DNA of 63,963 nt, the filler included, from Octopus bimaculoides (lineage: Eukaryota): NCBI RefSeq assembly GCF_001194135.2. It is 5 parts of 5 records of this genome, joined end to end, with 100 filler letters (N's around TTAATTAATTAA, not from the genome) between each part and the next. Parts side by side here need not be neighbours in the genome. Positions count along the whole stretch, not along the records: positions 1 to 27,653 come from NC_068985.1; 4 more parts are not named here. One strand, written 5' to 3'. Under the pieces are notes generated by a model. The model had not been told where the DNA came from. It ran no database searches and saw nothing but the letters and a program-made list of their open reading frames with translations. The position numbers and the translations under genes are program-made. Positions 2,291 through 24,269 of the stretch are shown one piece after another. Position 1 is the stretch's first letter. Each line of letters opens with the position of its first letter.

Positions 2291-2721
2291 NNNNNNNNNN
2301 NNNNNNNNNNNNNNNNNNNNNNNNNNNNNNNNNNNNNNNNNNNNNNNNNNNNNNNNNNNNNNNNNNNNNNNNNNNNNNNNNNNNNNNNNNNNNNNNNNNN
2401 NNNNNNNNNNNNNNNNNNNNNNNNNNNNNNNNNNNNNNNNNNNNNNNNNNNNNNNNNNNNNNNNNNNNNNNNNNNNNNNNNNNNNNNNNNNNNNNNNNNN
2501 NNNNNNNNNNNNNNNNNNNNNNNNNNNNNNNNNNNNNNNNNNNNNNNNNNNNNNNNNNNNNNNNNNNNNNNNNNNNNNNNNNNNNNNNNNNNNNNNNNNN
2601 NNNNNNNNNNNNNNNNNNNNNNNNNNNNNNNNNNNNNNNNNNNNNNNNNNNNNNNNNNNNNNNNNNNNNNNNNNNNNNNNNNNNNNNNNNNNNNNNNNNN
2701 NNNNNNNNNNNNNNNNNNNNN

Positions 2722-3081: not shown

Positions 3082-4527
3082 ATGGATGTCGAAGAGGTTG
3101 TGGTACCCTCTCAACAAATCAAGGCCGATACTGCTGCTCTGACTGAGAAGAATATACCACTGACTTGCAGTATATGTAGCGGAAAGTTTCACTCACCCAG
3201 GGCGTTGCCCTGCCTACATACATACTGCAAAACCTGTTTGAGCTCTTACATTCAAGCATATCTGAGTGAGACAAACAAGGGCTCATTCCCATGTCCGGAC
3301 TGCCAGGAAGATACGCAACCAATCGACCCAACACGCCCTTATATTGAATGGGCTGATGGTTTCCCGGAAAATTTTTTCCTGACAGATATGAACATAGAAA
3401 TAATAAACGACAGCAATATTGCCAATGACACTAACCGAAAATCGATTGGTTTAAATAAAACAGTTCGAAATCCTCGTTTAAGTTTCAGTGACACAGATAT
3501 CTTTAAAAGCTCTGTTACGAAGTCATTTGATACGAAAACCTTTAAGGAACACACAGTGGTGTTAGAAAAAGAAGAGAAAATTCTACAAACTTGCCAAAAG
3601 TTGGACGAAGCCATGGTATTGAAAAAAGAGGACGGAAACTTAAAATCTCAGGACGAGTTAACAGATTGTAAAAACGAAGAAAACACTACCAAGATGCCCA
3701 AAGGAAGTGAAGTCGAAGAAGAAAATGGTCTATTGTTGCCATTGGAAAATAAATTTACAGCTCATCTTCCAGGTGTCGAAGTCCCTTCCATTTTAAACAA
3801 TGCCATAATACTTCCGTCGGGGGAAGTATTAGGGGTCGATGTGAGAAATCGACACGTGAAGAAATTTTCCCTGTCCGGGAAATTAATTGGTTTGCTTCGT
3901 TTGATGTCCGAACCAGGAGATATTGCTCTCCTTCCTGAAGGTGAAGCATTGGTTACTTTGCCCCAAAAGTCAGAAATCATTACTTTTGATCCTGATAAAT
4001 CTATGGAGGTAATCGATCATATCCCAACACCTCGAAAATATACGTGTATCGCAGTAGGACAACCCGAAAAGTTAGTCGCTACGCACTGCGTGGAAAACTT
4101 CTGGTGCGTCGATGTTCTCTCGTATGCTTGTTATATTCTTTATTCCATTCAACGAAACTGCGTCGGAAAACCAATGGGCCTTACAATATCCCCGAATTTC
4201 GATATTATAGTCTCAGATACCCTAGAACGGTCTCTGATCTCCTACAAGTGGGACGGTAGCATCAATTTTATGTACAAACCAGACCCTTCCGAAAGTGACG
4301 AGTGTTTAGAAGAACCGCGTGGAGTTTGTTGTGGTCGAGACGGCTCAGTTTATTTGGCTGACACGAAGAATGACCGAATCATTCATATGAGCAAAACCGG
4401 ATTCTTTAAAAGGATACTCTTGGATGGAACTGACGGCATCAGTCGCCCCGTGGGACTTTATTTTAGTGATAAATCCAAACTGTTAGTGACCCAGGAAGAT
4501 GGTGTTGTAAAAATATTCGGCATGTAA
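3082..4527 (+). CDS. Intronless RING-HC + NHL-repeat/beta-propeller protein (TRIM-NHL-like putative E3 ubiquitin ligase), 481 aa
   Basis: Uninterrupted ORF with an in-frame upstream TAA (3061-3063). TRIM-type C3HC4 RING CSIC...LPCLHTYCKTC...FPCPDC (about 3166-3303). C-terminal NHL-like blades, e.g. EEPRGVCCGRDGSVYLADTKNDRIIHMS and ISRPVGLYFSDKSKLLVTQEDGVVKIF. No B-box motif seen. Confidence 0.93.
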   Translation: MDVEEVVVPSQQIKADTAALTEKNIPLTCSICSGKFHSPRALPCLHTYCKTCLSSYIQAYLSETNKGSFPCPDCQEDTQPIDPTRPYIEWADGFPENFFLTDMNIEIINDSNIANDTNRKSIGLNKTVRNPRLSFSDTDIFKSSVTKSFDTKTFKEHTVVLEKEEKILQTCQKLDEAMVLKKEDGNLKSQDELTDCKNEENTTKMPKGSEVEEENGLLLPLENKFTAHLPGVEVPSILNNAIILPSGEVLGVDVRNRHVKKFSLSGKLIGLLRLMSEPGDIALLPEGEALVTLPQKSEIITFDPDKSMEVIDHIPTPRKYTCIAVGQPEKLVATHCVENFWCVDVLSYACYILYSIQRNCVGKPMGLTISPNFDIIVSDTLERSLISYKWDGSINFMYKPDPSESDECLEEPRGVCCGRDGSVYLADTKNDRIIHMSKTGFFKRILLDGTDGISRPVGLYFSDKSKLLVTQEDGVVKIFGM

Positions 4528-4974
4528 AAGGTAATTTGCAACGACCCTGGTAATAGTAGTAATAATAATAATAATAATAATAATAATGATAATAATAATA
4601 ATAATTTCTTTTATTAGCCACAGGGTATCACTCAGAAAAAAAAAAACTTGTCATCACAAACATTAATATCAAGTCATTGTTTCTCTTTATTTTTCTAATT
4701 TTTATATTTTTTAAAACTTACTGGTTATTATTCATTTACTTGCTACAATTATAAAATATATTTTGATTATGAATGTTTTGTTTTTGAAGGTACCTTTATA
4801 CTGTTGTTGTTGTTGTTATTTAACCCCAGATCTTACTGTCACCATCCTGTCTTATCTCCATCATAGTGTATCTGGGATGTTTCTCTTTAGTTGATTTGAG
4901 GTTGGAATATAAGGGATTTTTAATCCATGAAACTCCTAAACACTTACTGCTATTTTCGCTGATAATATGTATGT

Positions 4975-5007
<33 letters not shown>

Positions 5008-5073
5008 ACACACACACACGAGAGAGAGAGATGCAATAAAGCGTGTGTGCAATTATTATTATAATTTAAGTTT

Positions 5074-5110
<37 letters not shown>

Positions 5111-6780
5111 ATGTATACGTACGTAGTACATATATACAAGAATAAAACCTGCCGTCATCAAACTTCGATGTAGCTGTCAACTTTTTACTTGCCAAAATTA
5201 ATGTGTACTCTCTTAAAAAATATCAGCCTTTCAATATATTACATCACTTAAAAATGAACATGTATGTATGTATGCATGCCTATACGCATGTATGTGTGTA
5301 TGGATGGATGCATGCATGTATGTATGTATGGATGGATGCATGCATGTATGTATGGATGGATGCACGTCTGTATATATGTGTGCATGTCGTTGGAAAAGCA
5401 TTTAAAAATGTATTTTTCTTACTAGTAGTTTGAAATAACTTTTATACTTTTTTATTTCGTAAGATTTAGGACAACCATGTTGGAACAAGTTGTAATAATA
5501 ATAATAATGATTTCAAATTTTGGCATAAAACCAGTAAGGTTGGGGGATTACGAATAATGGATTTATTGTAATTCAGTGTTCGCGTGCACTGTTGTAGTAA
5601 ACCTTATAACAAGACAAGCACCTTTACTTTTGGGTTACATTAAGCACAAATGGTGATCGTTCAGTTTAATAGATAGAATAAAAACTTCTCGCAAATGTTT
5701 GTTATAAATATCATAGTTACAGTTTTTGTATAAATTTTGTTGTTTAGCCCCAGATGAAACACCAAGCCATCAGAACTTCTATGAGAAAAAATGTTCCAAT
5801 TGTAATCAACCCATTTTTTCTTTTCTGTATTTTTTTTTTGTCAAAGATTACATTATCTTAGGTATCCTTCCATTTTTTAAAACTGTAAAGGTGTGGTTAT
5901 TTGGCTGCTACTTTTAGAAGGTGGTGAGACCATTTTTGAGTAAACACATAGGCCTCAGAGGACAGATAAAAACTACCTTTGTTAGTTTGGTCCCCTATCT
6001 TGATAATTATCCTTTGATCATTTTGAGCTCAATACTTCCACATCAACTAGTTTACTTCCATGTTTACTAACCCTAATATCTATATAAAGTTGATAAGTTT
6101 AGCTGTGATGTCAGTCATAAAGATTTGTGGGCATTGCTTCACTAAACCACACTGCTCACTTTACTGCTCTCTTAGTCTGCATTAAGCTACACTGCTACTC
6201 TAGCTCGTGTCTATTTTATCGATCACAGTTATCTATTCACAAAGTCCATTGCTCTTTATGTACTGACTTTAAGTTGCGCACAAATTGACTTTGTCTTTTA
6301 TCTCTCCAAGGTCTTCTCTTTCAATCCTTTTCGCATCTGGAATCCCTTGTAGAAATATACTAGACTATGTAATGTGCACCTTCTGTCTTCTAGACTTACA
6401 GTGTTTAGTAATGCTTCTTTATGTTCTGAGTTCAAACCCCATTAACGCCAATTTACTTTTCTTCTTCCTGGGGTTGACAGAATATGCATTTCCCAAGTAG
6501 TGGGGTGATTGAATTGTTTATACGGCTCCTCTCCAAATTTCGTTCTAAGTTCAAAGTTTGAGTAACAAGATGTTGTGAAGAGGCCTGAGTTAGTAAACAT
6601 AATAAATATACTCTATATCAAGAGGTGAGTTCTTTTTAATTTGTTTGTAGAATTATTTTGTAAATAGAACTACTGTAAATGTATGTGTGTGTGTGTGAAT
6701 CAACAGACATACATATGTATATATGTACATGATTGTGTGCATATACATAGATGCAAACACACGCACATATATATATGTAT

Positions 6781-6835
<55 letters not shown>

Positions 6836-7104
6836 NNNNNNNNNNNNNNNNNNNNNNNNNNNNNNNNNNNNNNNNNNNNNNNNNNNNNNNNNNNNNNNNN
6901 NNNNNNNNNNNNNNNNNNNNNNNNNNNNNNNNNNNNNNNNNNNNNNNNNNNNNNNNNTATATGTATGTATGTATGTATATGTATGTATATATATATGTAT
7001 ATGTATGTATATATATGTATGTATGTATATATACAGACATGCATACATGTATATGTATACATGCACACACATGCATACTCATGTATAGAGAATGTGTATA
7101 ATAT

Positions 7105-7696
7105 ATAGATACACACATACATTTACCTGCACATATATAGTATATCTTGCATGTACAAATAGATATATAACTGCTACTGTTGAGTTTAGAACTTCACATA
7201 GATTATCACCATTCTGTCTGCTTCAAGTATAGTGGTTTGGTTGCTACTATATTTTATAGTATTATTAGTTATGATATACTGAGCAAATGTAGCAAACATT
7301 GCAATAAACATAAATTTATATCGTTTGTTCCTACACATGTTTCCTCATTGTGGTTGTTTACAACTTTGCATTTGATGTTCCAAGTTTGGAATTCTGCATT
7401 GGATGTCCCAAGTGCAACTGGAACATCAAATGCAAAGTTATAAACAACCACAATGAGGAAACATGTGTAGGAACAAATGATATAAATTTATGTTTATTGC
7501 AATGTTTGCTACATTTGCTCAGTATATCATAACTAATAATACTATAAAATATAGTAGCAACCAAACCACTATACTTGAAGCAGACAGAATGGTGATAATC
7601 TATGTGAAGTTCTAAACTCAACAGTAGCAGTTATATATCTATTTGTACATGCAAGATATACTATATATGTGCAGGTAAATGTATGTGTGTATCTAT
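7105..7696. repeat. Near-perfect inverted repeat: 278-bp arms, 36-bp spacer
   Basis: Arms 7105-7382 and 7419-7696 are reverse complements with 2 mismatches (7323, 7361). Mirrored ORFs in the track (7180-7443 + and 7358-7621 -) confirm the symmetry. Confidence 0.95.
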
Positions 7697-8075
7697 CTAT
7701 TGATGTTCCAGTTGCACTTGGGACATCCAATGCAGAATTCCAAACTACCACAGTGTTGAGACATGTGTAGGAACAAATGACATAAATTTATGTTTATCAT
7801 AATTTCTCCTACATGTACACATATACACATGCACATGTGTGTATACATGTATGTGTGTATACATGTATGTGTGTGTGCATTGAACTGAACAAATATTTGT
7901 CAATCCATTATTCAGTTTTAAAAAATAATAGTTGAAAAAAAAATCTATTCTTTTCAGCTGAAAACTCCTCTTTCTCACCCTATTCCTGCTCACACACTTC
8001 ACTCAACAAATATCACTGACACACACACTTCACTCACACACTTCACTCAACAAATATTACTGACACACAACACCA

Positions 8076-8156
8076 TCACCACCATCTCCAGTGTTCTTGC
8101 ACTTTTATTGTAGTCAGTTTTGTACCACAGAACCAGTGGTAGTCTTCATTAGATTG
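8076..8156 (-). CDS. Candidate terminal coding exon of unidentified minus-strand gene (QSNEDYHWFCGTKLTTIKVQEHWRWW*)
   Basis: Acceptor ...taatag|CAATCT. Phase 0 matches the candidate exon at 8267-8328. Only open frame of the three. Confidence 0.35.
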   Translation of the reverse strand, partial: QSNEDYHWFCGTKLTTIKVQEHWRWW

Positions 8157-11664: not shown

Positions 11665-12065
11665 CCAAGATGTGATGCAGTGTGGTTTCATGCAGAGGAG
11701 AGGCACTACTGATGCTGCCTTTATAGTTCATCCACTGCAAGAGAATTATTTAACAAAAAATAAACCACTGTACTTGGTATTCATCAACTTGGAGAATGCA
11801 TTTGACAGGGTGCCTTGCTCTCATATCTGGTGGTTGTTACAGAAGCTAAGAATAGATGAATGGCTAGTAGGAGCCATTCAAGGCATGTACAGGTATGTAG
11901 TCAGAAAAGTGAGATTTATCTATGAGTACAGTGATGAATTAAGTGTAGGAGTTTATCAGAGTTTGGTTATCAGTCCCCTATTATTTATCATAGTCCCCTA
12001 ATCCATAACAGAAGGATTTAAGCCTGGCTCCCCATGGGAACTACTCCATGCTAATGAACTAGTGC
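11665..12065 (+). mobile_element. RTE-clade LINE reverse transcriptase fragment (degenerate)
   Basis: QCGFMQRRGTTDAAF...YLVFINLENAFDRVP...LSVGVYQSLVISPLLFIIV, matching RTE RT motifs. Confidence 0.85.
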
Positions 12066-13734: not shown

Positions 13735-14391
13735 CATACATCTCAAAAATAAGCACATTCTAAAGCATAGAGCAGTAATATATTTATAAATAGTTGAGTC
13801 TATGTCTAGTCATAGTGACCAATGATGACAAATGTAACTCTTCACCTCTGAGAGGCAGAAATCTGTTACAGTCATTTGGTCAGCAGGAGGAGGCCGTTTG
13901 CTGTTGCAGGGTGTATAATGACTGTTCAGTGTGAGGCTGAGAGAGTCATCTATGAGACTGGTGATACCCAGACCTAGAGACCATAGTAACAGCAGCAATG
14001 GATCATCTAACAATGTTGACGGTATTGGCAGCAGTGACAGCAGCAGAAACACCAGCACTGATGCCAATGACTCCAGCACCAGCACTATGGCCAGAGAGGA
14101 TGACCACGCCAACACCAGCAGCACTAGCAAGGCTACCAGTCCCTCACTCAATGTTACCAACTATGGCACCCTCATTACCATCAGCGACGGTAGTGCCAAT
14201 GCCATGACCAGGGATGACCACCACAATGACAACAGCCAGCCACAGCAATAACGCTGGACCCACGCCTTGTAATGATAACAGCACCAAAGGCAGCCTCAGC
14301 TACACTGGTGGCAACATAAACTTCTCCAAGCCTGGAGCCAACCCAAGTTGCAACAATAATGTGAGCACAACCAATACCCGATATATAGAAA

Positions 14392-14690
14392 TATATTGGG
14401 TCAGCCGGGACAGCCTTCAAGCAATGCCTGTACAACCACAGGTCCTCTTTCAAGATTTTTGAAAGATGGTTTATCACATCTCTAGCCAGCTGTGTGTGGT
14501 GCCTCAAAGATGAAGGGAGCCCATATGATACCAAGTGGAGGATCTTAGAGTGGCCGGAACCCAACATTCACAGGAGCAAACACTGCAAGCTTCGTATAGC
14601 TTAGCAAGCATGGATACTTAAAGACTCCTTGAAACCTGAATCACTGAGCACTCACTAGGAAATTTACAGTCCTTGTATCCATTTCAAATA
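14392..14690 (+). mobile_element. Penelope-like element GIY-YIG endonuclease 3' fragment
   Basis: Frame not listed in the track reads YIGSAGTAFKQCLYNHRSSFK...SLASCVWCLKDEGSPYDTKWRILEWPEPNIHRSKHCKLRIA*, like the PLE YIG...YNNHKSSF...IKWSI...SKRCNLCL pattern. Confidence 0.75.
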
Positions 14691-14974
14691 CTGCCTGCTG
14701 CAAGCATGGGATTCCCTGTTCTCTGATTAGACCTAGAAGGGTCCTTATGATCCAAAAGCATCTTTGTTTCCCCTCTTTTAGCTCACAAAACACTGGTCTA
14801 AGGTAGATAACCCATCCTCACTGATCCCAGATTGTTTATTCAAATAACTGTAACAGATTCCTGCCTCCCAAAGGTGAAGATTTACATTTGTCTCTGGTTT
14901 TAGAGTCTGACAAGATGTTCACTACTTTTAAATATATATATATATATATATATATAAATATATCAATCATCATC

Positions 14975-15458: not shown

Positions 15459-15555
15459 AGATAATAAAACAAATGGTTGATACCTTGTAGCTTACTGGTA
15501 AAGCATGATCACTTTCTCAGTGTTCATTGGTTAATGAGAGATGAATGACAGACGA

Positions 15556-15820
15556 TAAAAGAGTTTTTATTAATCACTACAATTGTTTCAACTCATCTAG
15601 CATCGATCCCTCACTGGTGGGATACTTAACAACTGGTTCAGGAGCATCCGACAGTGCAAATGTGTCTCTTTGGGTGGTAAATAGATATAACTTGTTAAAA
15701 TAACAGCTCCACAGTGTATCTTCTCAGGTCGCGTAAAAGAAAGCAGCAAATTAATTATCCCAACCATGAGGGATCAATTTTAGATGGGTCAAAACAGTTG
15801 TAGTGATTAATAAAAATTCT
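15556..15820. repeat. Diverged inverted pair (about 70-bp arms) with decayed hammerhead-like cores
   Basis: 15556-15625 is roughly 80% reverse-complementary to 15745-15820. Each arm has an eroded CTGATGA...GAAA-like layout. Confidence 0.5.
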
Positions 15821-16183
15821 CATATCTTCCATCTTCTGTCTTTCATTAACCATATATGTGTCTGTGTGTGTACATATATTTATAGAGAGTGAGAAAGTAA
15901 AAGGAAAGACAGTGACAGAGAAAGAGAGCAGTGTGACATCTCATTCACCCAAATACTACTACAAAACATCAAACTGAAAAGAGCATTGCTAACTATAGTT
16001 TTATTAGAGCAAGCTAAACTAACTATCTAACCATATATTACATTACAAATAAGTCTCTAAAAGTCTATTAAAATGCCAATCTTCATGCATTCAGCTGTGT
16101 GCCAGAATTTTAACTTTCATGACAGACATCATGGTGATTAATGATCTTCAGAAGTATAACTAGTCAGGTATGACATGACTCAC

Positions 16184-20931: not shown

Positions 20932-21990
20932 TGAGGGTTGGTTGAAAAGTTCACTGGCTGACCACGATACTCTCATGGAATGTGAGCAAATGAGGTTCAT
21001 TTTTCAGCATAGACCTCCTTGGCAGTCTACACTCTTCTTCCATTGGTGTTGCAGTACTTGGATCCAATTAGTAAAGAAACTTTCATTCTATTAGTAAAAA
21101 AGTCAACAGCAGATATGACATCATCATCACTGTGACACTGGTTCCCAGCCAAGTGTTATTTCATGTTGGGGAACAAATGATACTCAGATGGGGCCAAATC
21201 AGAATAGGGAGTGTGATAAACCAATTCAAGGACACAGTCAAGCACAGTAGCCACTGAAACCAGGGATTTTTGTGCTGGAGCATTTTCCTAATGAAACAAA
21301 ACCCCTTTCATCAGTTTTCCTGGGTGTTTTATATCTTAATAACCATTTGTAACTGCCTTAGCAAGTTAGCATAGTACTCTCCATTGATAGTGTGGCCCTT
21401 TTGAAGATAAACACAATGACTTTTGTATCCTAATAAACTGAAGCCATCAGCTTCCCTGCTGAAGAAACGACCTTGGCCTTCTTTGGAGCAGGTGTGCAAA
21501 ATATTCTGAACTCTTTCACAGGATATGCTAATAGTATTGGCTATTTGATTTACAGTGAATTGTCTGTTATCCATCACCAAGTGGTGAACACAATCAATGC
21601 TTTCCTCAGTGGTGGCAGTTGCAGGACGTCCAGACCTTGGATCATCTTCAAGACTCTCCCTTTGTCTTCTAAATTCAGCTACCCAATTTTGCACTGTTGA
21701 TAAAGCTGAAGCATTATCCCTTAATGTAGCAACAATATCAGCATGAATGTCCTTGGAGGCCAGATCCTTTTTCTGCAGATACTTGATAAAACTACCATGC
21801 TAAATTTTGTTAATTTTCAAAAGAAGTCACGACTAGTTACATTTGAAGTGTTCTTTGAACAGTCAGATGTCAGTTTACCTGGAAAGAAACTGCCATTATT
21901 AATGAGAAGAGAGTTGAAATTAATGCGTGCAAGGTTTCACAGCTCTAGTATTACTCCTTCATAGTCAGCCTATGAACTTTTCAGTCCATG
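20932..21990 (-). mobile_element. Internally deleted mariner transposon
   Basis: WVAEFRRQRESLEDDPRSGRP and LQKGHTINGEYYANLL motifs. TIR cores TGAAAAGTTCA..GGCTGAC at both ends, TA at the left end. Confidence 0.85.
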
Positions 21991-24269
21991 GATGGACTTG
22001 TTTCAGAATGTTAATGAGTGAAAGTTTTTCAAGCTAACAGGAAAATTTTGATTTTATGTAAGCTAAAATATTTATGCAAGCAGCAGCTGTTCTGTTTCAG
22101 CTAATGCAAACAATATTCTAATACACGTCAAACTGGGTGTGAAACTATGTCAGTGCATAAATAATTTCTAACCTTAGTGAACAAGAGTCTGATCTTTCAG
22201 GTGTGGTTTTAGATACTATTAATGCATGTAGTTGCTTTGAAAGATTGTCAGAGACTAGGAGGTCCAGGCTTTGTTTCAATGTTGTAATACTTGCAGGTTA
22301 TTTGCAAACAAGGGAAGTGTAAATTTGTTGATGTGTTCCATTAATGTGTCTAACAACTGTGACTTGTTGCAGAATGAGGTCACCAATATGCTGTAAAATT
22401 ATATGGTTTACAATGCTGTCTTCTAATATGCAGTAAAGTTATATGGTTTACAATATCTTCTTACGGGCAGTATAGTCAAATGGGTTACAAATTACATTCT
22501 AATAGGTGGTATCCTTATATATGGCTCTCAATGACACCTTCTGATGGGTATTGTTGTTAGATATGTTAAAATTCTATCTTCATCAGAAACTGTTAATTAC
22601 TGAATTATTTGAACCCATTTTATTTCAGTTTTGGTAACTAATGCCCTGAAGAAAGACAAGAGTTTCACAAGGTTATGTTTTGTCACTCCTTTCTTTGGTT
22701 TTGTAAAAATAAATTTGCAAAATAAAGTCAAAGAATAATGTAGGCTAACTTTCATTGGAAGGGAAGCGTAGGTTTATAAACTACAAAGAATCTGGTGCTT
22801 AATACAATTAAGGGGACTTTGACTAAATAACCTCTTGTTATAAAGCATTTGAGTTTCTAGGCCCTAATTATAACATTGAAAAACATTTCAGAAGTGACCC
22901 TCAGGTTTTGGATATGAAATTTTATCACACTCAAATATCTCAATATATTGACATATTCAAGGTATCTTGACACTTATAGGAGGGTCTATCTTATTTTAGG
23001 AATATATTTTTTTAAAGCTTCCAATATGCTGACACATTTATGTCTGTGGCAGGGTGAGGCTCAATGATACATATCATTATGTTGTGGGGTCATCAATGAT
23101 CAACTGTGATCACTTAAATAGAGGATTTTCTTTTATCAATTCCTGGAACTGGTGTATGTATGTGTGTGTGTGTATTTATGTATGAATGAATGTAGAAGGT
23201 TTAGATTTAGATTCAAAAATTGAATATGGTACTTATGTTTAGGCACCAGAATATAGTATGGTATGGTATTATACAAAAACCATTCCAAAAAACGAGGTGA
23301 TCAAAAATTCAAAATAAGCAACACAGATTTTAAAGATGATTGCAGTACGCACGTTTCATGCTACTCCATTTATTTAAGTAATGCGAGCATTACATTAAAT
23401 GCAATATGTAGAGCAATCTTCAGCTGCACAAAAATGCAGAAAATTACAGTAGAATAAGACATATTATAATTGTGGCAACATTTCAAATCCAAGTGGGAAG
23501 AAGAATACATAAAAATCCACCTTGACATAGCCAAGGCTNNNNNNNNNNNNNNNNNNNNNNNNNNNNNNNNNNNNNNNNNNNNNNNNNNNNNNNNNNNNNN
23601 NNNNNNNNNNNNNNNNNNNNNNNNNNNNNNNNNNNNNNNNNNNNNNNNNNNNNNNNNNNNNNNNNNNNNNNNNNNNNNNNNNNNNNNNNNNNNNNNNNNN
23701 NNNNNNNNNNNNNNNNNNNNNNNNNATCACTTCTAAGGAAAGGGAAGGTGTAAGCATTATGCATGGACATGGCTATAAAGGATATGGTTATAAAGGTTTC
23801 TCTGGTCAGAGTGGCAACACTATTATAGGTTGGGTTTTTTTTACTACTATCAAAATGTTGAGGAATTAAACCCTAAGCATATAGGTCAAACAGGGCTTTT
23901 TCTTTAGTCTGAATAGAGCATCAATATTGTTATACAGATATCAATATTAGTTTAAACAATATTTTAATAATAAGAAGTATGTTAACAATAATAAAATGTA
24001 ATGTAATTAGTTTATACAAAAATCATGAAGTAATGTCAGTATTGAATTCAGAGGCTATAGATAAGGTGTAAAGTCCAAGGATATTATGTATATTGGGCTC
24101 AGGAAAAACTATTTTGAATTATTTTTTAAATGATTTAAAAATTTAAGCTGATATATATAATAATACTATTTTGAAGACACATAAAATTCTTCTTCACATT
24201 ATAAAAATATTTATGTATGTTTACAAGCACATGTCATGGCTATCTCTTTTTTTCTTTATCTTTCATAGT

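What the first reader, a model, noticed from the sequence alone, without database searches (positions are those of the whole stretch)
7105..7696. Young, 99% perfect 278-bp-arm hairpin just past the stop codon of the hidden minus-strand gene
Seen: only 2 mismatches over 278 bp and a 36-nt loop, about 380 bp beyond the candidate stop at 8076. If transcribed, each strand gives one G-U wobble and one A-C mismatch. Established: long dsRNA is the substrate of ADAR, which is very active in coleoids, and of Dicer (hairpin endo-siRNAs); A-C mismatches are favoured editing sites. Inference: this may be a 3'-UTR dsRNA element driving hyper-editing, siRNA production or nuclear retention. Such palindromes are usually unstable, so its retention is notable.
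Basis: partly seen in the sequence, partly recalled or inferred. Interest (0 to 1): 0.7.

Follow-up and report, generated by a model that had tools for sequence, protein, structure and literature searches.

The report
Young local inverted duplication, octopus intergenic DNA
The near-perfect 600-bp hairpin is in the sequence, but it is best read as a recent inverted copy of the neighbouring 319 bp of intergenic octopus DNA, formed at an older imperfect hairpin, with no sign of a gene or 3'UTR around it, so it is an ordinary structural mutation (or, less likely, a short-read assembly error).

Summary
The window is Octopus bimaculoides GCA_001194135.2, built from 2015 Illumina contigs plus Hi-C.

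The orthologous locus of O. vulgaris (GCA_951406725.2) has only one arm. Deleting window 7383-7710 (328 bp) restores collinearity exactly. The octopus copy is therefore a local inverted duplication of 319 nt. The source is 7100-7382 plus 7711-7746, and the copy is the reverse complement of 7383-7701. The topology is a-b | c'-b'-a' | b-c, and an 11-nt piece is present three times.

Both copies share all 24 differences from O. vulgaris and differ from each other at 3 sites, with derived bases in both copies. That fits a real, young duplication, at about 12% of the species divergence. It sits at the tip of an older 75-79% quasi-palindrome present in both species.

I found no minus-strand gene. 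The frame ending at 8076 is open for only 26 codons, there are no Pfam hits, and neither species has an annotated gene nearby except a RING-NHL gene 2.6 kb upstream. No Rfam family reaches its threshold. Transcription, editing and small RNAs cannot be tested here. An assembly artefact remains possible, at about 25%. The existing HiFi assembly of O. bimaculoides would settle that.

The parts
7100..7382 (.). Left arm. With 7711-7746 it forms copy 1, which sits in the ancestral position and is collinear with O. vulgaris L002 about 14079-14361.
7383..7418 (.). 36-nt loop of the hairpin. It is an exact reverse complement of 7711-7746, so it is part of the inverted copy and not unique spacer.
7419..7701 (.). 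Right arm. The reverse complement of 7383-7701 is copy 2, 319 nt, with 3 differences from copy 1.
7383..7710 (.). The 328 bp that are absent from the O. vulgaris orthologous locus. Removing them restores an uninterrupted alignment. The placement is ambiguous by 11 nt, so 7372-7699 is equivalent.
7372..7382 (+). 11-nt TTGATGTTCCA, first of three copies. The others are the reverse complement at 7419-7429 and a direct copy at 7700-7710. Junction 1 (7382|7383) is blunt and lies 1-4 nt from the apical loop of the older quasi-hairpin.
7699..7710 (+). Junction 2 (2-nt TT microhomology at 7700-7701) and the third copy of the 11-mer.
7711..7821 (.). 7711-7746 is the source of the loop. 7716-7821 is the old diverged arm, 79% complementary to 7280-7385, of a quasi-palindrome that O. 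vulgaris also has (L002 14268-14358 / 14375-14465, 75%; RNA fold -66.9 kcal/mol, z = -7.4).
6836..6957 (.). Assembly gap (122 N) inside a (TA)n/(TATG)n microsatellite that is also present in O. vulgaris. The microsatellite explains the gap; the palindrome does not.
3082..4527 (+). Nearest gene: an intronless RING + NHL (TRIM-like) protein of 481 aa, used as the anchor to fetch the orthologous locus. The hairpin lies 2.6 kb downstream of its stop, beyond four AATAAA signals.

Best explanation
This is a real, lineage-specific local inverted duplication in intergenic DNA of Octopus bimaculoides. A 319-nt stretch (7100-7382 plus the 36 nt that now lie at 7711-7746) was copied in reverse orientation and inserted next to itself. 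The result has the order a-b | c'-b'-a' | b-c, where a = 7100-7371, b = the 11-mer and c = the 36-mer. Two new junctions were created. One is blunt, at the tip of a pre-existing imperfect hairpin. The other has 2 nt of microhomology. The most likely process is two strand switches during replication, or repair of a break, at that older quasi-palindrome (inferred). The product is probably neutral. It would form a 283-bp dsRNA only if something transcribes through it, and there is no evidence here that anything does.
For: Shown: the window is identical to GCA_001194135.2 chromosome CM046605.1. The O. vulgaris locus, fetched through the orthologous RING-NHL protein (96% identity), aligns collinearly on both sides at about 88-90%. 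It holds one arm followed directly by the sequence of window 7711 onward. Deleting window 7383-7710 gives a continuous alignment across the junction. Copy 1 and copy 2 are 316/319 identical. At 24 sites both copies differ from O. vulgaris in the same way. One difference between the copies is derived in copy 1 and two in copy 2. That pattern is expected for paralogues that diverged slightly after a recent duplication. A snap-back or self-copy artefact would give identical arms. The junctions are not at shared k-mers (0 and 2 nt of overlap), so a graph mis-traversal by an assembler is unlikely to have produced them. The older quasi-palindrome exists in both species. Quasi-palindromes are documented break and template-switch hotspots (PMC3855049 and PMC7467729, titles and abstracts as listed; PMC10766186). 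There is no gene, Pfam domain or Rfam family at the site.
Against: The contigs come from a short-read (2015 Illumina) assembly (PMC9068888). The longest exact stretch shared by the arms is 218 nt, which I take to be longer than the reads of that assembly (my own knowledge, not checked here). If so, the structure, and in particular the orientation of the central 7324-7477 segment, cannot have been read directly. No reads, and no second assembly of this species, could be reached here. With one outgroup only, the polarity (gain in O. bimaculoides versus loss in O. vulgaris) rests on a clock argument that gene conversion between the arms would undermine. The mechanism itself is inferred. Neither junction shows the short interrupted inverted repeat expected for fold-back priming or ODIRA.
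Confidence: 0.6

Rival explanations
1. Assembly artefact. The true O. bimaculoides locus has one arm, as in O. vulgaris. The second arm was created during short-read assembly or gap closure, with the arm 'mismatches' being heterozygous SNPs of a single-copy region.
For: The contigs are Illumina-only (PMC9068888). The exact arm stretches (218 nt) probably exceed read length. A scaffold gap lies 142 bp away. The three arm differences could formally be the two haplotypes.
Against: Both junction sequences (7382|7383 blunt; 7699-7701 with 2 nt of overlap) are novel strings absent from the one-arm arrangement, so reads must contain them. Three SNPs in 319 bp would be roughly ten times the genome-wide heterozygosity I recall for this individual (my own knowledge, not checked here). 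The nearby gap is explained by a TA microsatellite that O. vulgaris also has. No other such palindrome occurs in 27.6 kb.
Confidence: 0.25
2. The palindrome is ancestral and O. vulgaris lost one arm by slippage between the two direct 11-mers (7372-7382 and 7700-7710). The arms in O. bimaculoides stayed 99% alike through gene conversion.
For: The missing 328 bp are bounded exactly by the 11-nt direct repeats. That is the classical end-point pattern for deletion of hairpins (established knowledge).
Against: It needs concerted evolution to explain 3 differences between the arms against 24 shared differences from O. vulgaris. The loop and its source are 36/36 identical although they are not paired arms. 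The direct 11-mers are equally a by-product of the duplication topology.
Confidence: 0.08
3. A functional dsRNA element. It would be part of a transcript, either the 3'UTR of a minus-strand gene or a read-through of the RING-NHL gene, and would serve as an ADAR hyper-editing or Dicer substrate.
For: The duplex would be very stable. O. bimaculoides has an exceptionally high hyper-editing rate and many long near-perfect dsRNA-forming loci (PMC5625713).
Against: No ORF, Pfam domain or annotated gene supports a minus-strand gene. Four AATAAA signals lie between the RING-NHL stop and the hairpin. The second arm is absent from O. vulgaris, so any function would be species-specific and very recent. 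The duplicated sequence matches nothing else in the window, so there is no candidate target there.
Confidence: 0.05
4. A foldback or MITE-type transposable element with 283-bp terminal inverted repeats inserted here.
For: It is formally a 602-bp unit made almost entirely of two inverted arms.
Against: O. vulgaris does not show an empty site. It carries one arm in a collinear context, so the arm is resident sequence and not an insertion. There is no target-site duplication at 7099/7702. There are no further copies in the window or in 21 kb of O. vulgaris.
Confidence: 0.02

Closest known systems
Inverted duplications and inverted triplications made by strand switching at replication forks (ODIRA; the DUP-TRP/INV-DUP class; PMC10766186)
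   Same: The topology is the same: an inverted middle segment between direct copies, a small segment present three times (the 11-mer), two novel junctions, and a spacer of tens of nucleotides (36 nt) at the palindrome centre.
   Different: The scale is hundreds of bp, not kb to Mb. In the ancestral-like sequence neither junction sits at a short interrupted inverted repeat. Junction 1 is blunt. The loop has the opposite orientation to the simple ODIRA prediction (a-b-c-b'-a'-b-c), although a loop flip by arm recombination or an assembly ambiguity could account for that. No replication origin is known here.
Fold-back inversions primed by single-stranded hairpins, and fragility of quasi-palindromes (yeast studies PMC7467729 and PMC3855049, cited from titles and abstracts only)
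   Same: The new palindrome arose at the tip of a pre-existing imperfect hairpin that both species share.
   Different: The event is interstitial and both flanks are intact. There is no terminal deletion. The centre of the new palindrome (7400/7401) is not the centre of the old one.
Hairpin-RNA (hpRNA) endo-siRNA loci of Drosophila and young plant MIRNA genes born by inverted duplication (my own knowledge)
   Same: A long near-perfect inverted duplicate of recent origin, which would be a good Dicer substrate if transcribed.
   Different: Those loci copy part of a target gene and are demonstrably transcribed and diced. Here the copied DNA is intergenic, no target is apparent, and expression is unknown.
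ADAR hyper-edited inverted-repeat loci (PMC5625713)
   Same: It is a potential long, nearly perfect dsRNA in a genome that is rich in such loci and in hyper-editing.
   Different: Most such loci are pairs of transposon copies inside transcripts. This is a unique-sequence duplication with no evidence that it lies in a transcript.

Membership tests
ODIRA / fold-back priming inverted amplification | An inverted copy adjacent to the original, with a short single-copy spacer | tested here: met
   283-nt arms with 36 nt between them.
ODIRA / fold-back priming inverted amplification | Junctions map to pre-existing short interrupted inverted repeats in the unrearranged sequence | tested here: not met
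   With O. vulgaris as proxy for the unrearranged state, the 11-mer's reverse complement is not present 36 nt downstream. Junction 1 is blunt and junction 2 has 2 nt of overlap.
ODIRA / fold-back priming inverted amplification | Inverted triplication topology (the middle copy inverted) | tested here: inconclusive
   Only the 11-mer is present three times (7372-82, reverse complement at 7419-29, 7700-10). The loop orientation differs from the simple prediction.
hpRNA / endo-siRNA hairpin gene | Long near-perfect inverted repeat | tested here: met
hpRNA / endo-siRNA hairpin gene | Transcription through both arms and 21-22-nt Dicer products | not testable with these tools
   No RNA-seq or small-RNA data can be reached. 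Look-ups of ORFs spanning the loop found nothing on record.
hpRNA / endo-siRNA hairpin gene | Arms derived from, and complementary to, a target gene | tested here: not met
   The arms copy adjacent intergenic DNA. There are no Pfam hits in the arm ORFs and no other copy in the window. The rest of the genome was not searchable.
3'UTR ADAR hyper-editing substrate | Lies inside a transcript or 3'UTR of a gene | tested here: not met
   The frame ending at 8076 is open for 26 codons. There is no annotated gene nearby in two species and there are no Pfam hits. Unannotated non-coding transcripts are not excluded.
3'UTR ADAR hyper-editing substrate | Clusters of A-to-G mismatches in RNA reads | not testable with these tools
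   No reads are available.
MITE / foldback transposon | Target-site duplication, and an empty site in relatives | tested here: not met
   The flanks at 7099/7702 are unrelated. O. vulgaris carries one arm in collinear context, not an empty site.
Known RNA families (Rfam 15, including miRNA precursors) | Score at or above the family gathering threshold | tested here: not met
   The best hit is MIR7533 at 105 bits against a threshold of 230. All hits are generic long-hairpin or low-complexity matches.

The most novel reading that the evidence does not exclude
The duplication is real and is transcribed. That would make it a newborn, species-specific hairpin-RNA locus in an octopus: a dsRNA gene caught at birth through a second round of palindrome formation at an older hairpin, feeding ADAR hyper-editing or an endo-siRNA pathway.
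Probability: 0.04. Interest if true: 0.55.

Novelty: new member of a known kind. Interest (0 to 1): 0.2.

Why it matters
If real, this is a clean, base-resolved example of how a long perfect palindrome is born at a pre-existing quasi-palindrome in an animal germ line. Both junctions and the ancestral state are visible. It also shows the kind of raw material that makes the octopus genome unusually rich in dsRNA-forming loci. If it is an artefact, it flags a class of error to filter before counting hairpins or editing substrates in the short-read O. bimaculoides assembly. Either way it is not evidence for a regulatory 3'UTR element.

Tried and rejected
1. Fold-back priming at a short inverted repeat flanking the loop. 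The 11-mer and its reverse complement (7372-82 / 7419-29) looked like the classic signature. O. vulgaris shows that the second 11-mer is itself part of the new copy and did not pre-exist.

2. Pairing of the last 4 nt of the 36-mer (AACT) with AGTT at 7382-7385 as a priming site. This predicts one T fewer than is observed (reading), so I rejected it.

3. Independent read-level support through Logan or other assemblies. Exact-product look-ups were made for ORFs spanning the loop (7180-7440, 7350-7529, and a 36-aa partial ORF expected for a k=31 unitig). None is on record. The 481-aa neighbouring protein is on record only in the same assembly.

4. Transposon or repeat-family origin. There is no other copy in the window or in 21 kb of O. 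vulgaris.

5. Coding potential of the arms and of the 'hidden gene'. There are no Pfam hits and the open frame is only 26 codons.

6. Known RNA families. Nothing reaches its threshold.

7. The methods of the 2015 genome paper could not be read because the paper is not held. Statements about its read lengths, assembler and heterozygosity are from my own memory.

Full report
**What is in the sequence.** The window is identical, over the 14.5 kb that could be compared, to Octopus bimaculoides assembly GCA_001194135.2, chromosome CM046605.1. That assembly is the 2015 shotgun assembly placed on chromosomes with Hi-C (PMC9068888).

The inverted repeat is real in this sequence. Its arms are 7100-7382 and 7419-7701, 283 nt each, with 36 nt between them. 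There are three mismatches, at 7104/7697, 7323/7478 and 7361/7440.

Complementarity ends abruptly at 7099/7702. As RNA the region folds at -514 kcal/mol, against -160 +/- 6 for shuffles. Nothing comparable exists elsewhere in the 27.6 kb apart from N runs and microsatellites.

There are three further features:
- 7700-7746 is an exact reverse complement of 7383-7429, which is the loop plus 11 nt.
- 7702-7821 is a roughly 79% identical, older partial copy of the start of the right arm. Equivalently, 7716-7821 is 79% complementary to 7280-7385.
- A 122-N gap lies at 6836-6957, 142 bp to the left, inside a TA/TATG microsatellite.

**The decisive comparison.** The only gene nearby is an intronless RING + NHL (TRIM-like) ORF at 3082-4527. 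Its O. vulgaris orthologue (96% identity) lies on chromosome OX597818.1 of assembly GCA_951406725.2, and I fetched it with 10-kb flanks.

The two loci are collinear on both sides of the hairpin at about 88-90% identity. O. vulgaris has a single arm. Its sequence runs ...ACAACTTTGTATTTGATGTTGCA directly into GTTGCACTTGGGACATCC..., which is window 7382 joined to window 7711. Deleting window 7383-7710 (328 bp) gives an uninterrupted alignment across that point.

O. bimaculoides therefore carries an extra segment that is the reverse complement of its own neighbourhood:
- Copy 1 is 7100-7382 plus 7711-7746 (319 nt).
- Copy 2 is the reverse complement of 7383-7701.
- Write a = 7100-7371, b = the 11-mer TTGATGTTCCA and c = the 36-mer. 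The ancestral-like order is a-b-c and the present order is a-b | c'-b'-a' | b-c.
- So a and c are each present twice, and b is present three times with the middle copy inverted.
- Junction 1 (7382|7383) is blunt. Junction 2 has a 2-nt TT overlap at 7700-7701.

**Age, and real versus artefact.** In a three-way alignment the two copies differ at 3 of 319 sites. At 24 sites both copies differ from O. vulgaris in the same way. One of the three differences is derived in copy 1 and two in copy 2. Taken at face value, the duplication happened at roughly 12% of the way back to the species split.

Derived changes in both copies are what diverging paralogues show. A self-copy artefact would give identical arms. 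A mis-traversal of an assembly graph would be expected to switch at shared k-mers, but the junctions have 0 and 2 nt of overlap. Their sequences do not exist in a one-arm locus, so reads must contain them. The neighbouring gap is explained by a microsatellite that O. vulgaris also has.

Against this, the contigs are short-read only. The arms share an exact 218-nt stretch. I take this to be longer than the reads of that assembly (my own knowledge, not checked). If so, the structure was inferred by the assembler and not read through, and the orientation of the central 7324-7477 piece is not secure.

I could reach no reads and no second assembly. Exact-product look-ups for ORFs that span the loop returned nothing. 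I put the real duplication at about 0.6-0.7 in total, counting the variant in which it is old and was lost in O. vulgaris, and the artefact at about 0.25.

**How it probably arose (inferred).** Both species carry an older imperfect hairpin at this spot. In O. vulgaris it has 91-nt arms, 75% complementary and 16 nt apart, with an RNA fold of -66.9 kcal/mol and z = -7.4. Junction 1 lies within a few nucleotides of its apical loop.

Quasi-palindromes are known sites of breakage and of strand switching (PMC3855049 and PMC7467729, from the titles and abstracts listed; PMC10766186). The a-b | c'-b'-a' | b-c order needs two switches of template strand, or an equivalent break repair. It belongs to the same topological class as the inverted triplication / DUP-TRP/INV-DUP structures discussed in PMC10766186.

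It is not a clean member of that family. The unrearranged sequence has no short interrupted inverted repeat at either junction. The loop also has the opposite orientation to the simple prediction. A loop flip by recombination between the arms, or an assembly ambiguity, could explain the orientation, but I cannot show either.

My first idea was fold-back priming on the 11-mer pair that flanks the loop. The O. vulgaris sequence refutes it, because the second 11-mer is part of the new copy.

**The functional reading.** The minus-strand frame that ends at the TGA at 8076-8078 is open for only 26 codons. Several other lines point the same way:
- That frame, the other minus-strand ORFs up to 9.7 kb, and the ORFs inside the arms have no Pfam match.
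- The annotations of both species list no gene within about 10 kb other than the RING-NHL gene.
- Identity to O. vulgaris in 8.1-10.1 kb is no higher than in the rest of the intergenic alignment.
- On the plus strand, four AATAAA signals separate the RING-NHL stop from the hairpin.
- Rfam gives only sub-threshold generic long-hairpin and low-complexity hits.

The '3'UTR of a hidden gene' premise is therefore not supported. The dsRNA potential is real but conditional on transcription, which cannot be tested here. Porath et al. report that O. bimaculoides has an exceptionally high fraction of loci able to form long near-perfect dsRNA, and very high hyper-editing (PMC5625713). Even if this locus is transcribed, it would be one of many.

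**Verdict.** The most likely identity is a young, probably neutral, local inverted duplication at an older quasi-palindrome in intergenic DNA, which is a new instance of a known kind of structural mutation. An assembly artefact is the main rival. An existing HiFi assembly of the same species (PRJNA1076263; PMC10925132) would decide between them. Interest is low.

Noticed in passing
window 3082-4527 (+): An intronless 481-aa RING (C3HC4) + NHL-repeat, TRIM-like gene. The O. vulgaris orthologue is annotated as only 380 aa (79% of the query covered, 96% identity), which suggests a truncated gene model there. The next nearest hits are 90% (a Logan transcript-like contig from SRR11869394) and 64% (Argonauta hians).
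   Followed up: partly
window 7280-7385 / 7716-7821; L002 14268-14465: An older imperfect hairpin (75-79% complementary arms of 90-106 nt), conserved in position in both octopus species. It contains a roughly 28-nt quasi-repeat (TGGGACATCCAATGCAGAATTCCAAACT against TGGAACATCAAATGCAAAGTTGTAAACA). It may itself be the remnant of an earlier inverted duplication or of a MITE.
   Followed up: partly
window 11672-12001 (+): A reverse-transcriptase (RVT_1) fragment, probably a decayed LINE. It lies inside the block that aligns with O. vulgaris at about 89%, so the insertion predates the species split.
   Followed up: partly
window 21329-21694 (-): An ORF with HTH_32 and a partial mariner-type Transposase_1 match: a decayed DNA-transposon fragment.
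   Followed up: no
window 15528-15629 / 15751-15852: A second diverged inverted repeat (102-nt arms, 78% complementary, 121 nt apart). It could be an old MITE or hairpin and was not examined.
   Followed up: no
window 2291-2721, 6836-6957, 23539-23725: The two scaffold gaps whose flanks were read (2291-2721 and 6836-6957) are bordered by TA/CA/TATG microsatellites, consistent with short-read contig breaks at simple repeats. The flanks of 23539-23725 were not inspected. The window itself starts right after a 2245-N gap in the chromosome record.
   Followed up: partly
window 4877-5343 vs L002 11492-12545: Just downstream of the conserved roughly 350 bp after the RING-NHL stop, the two species differ by several hundred bp of inserted or deleted low-complexity sequence (a broken alignment with extra sequence in O. 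vulgaris).
   Followed up: no
window 14841-14892 vs L002 20348-20297: A 52-bp match at 94% in inverted orientation relative to the surrounding collinear alignment. It could be a small inversion or a short dispersed repeat.
   Followed up: no
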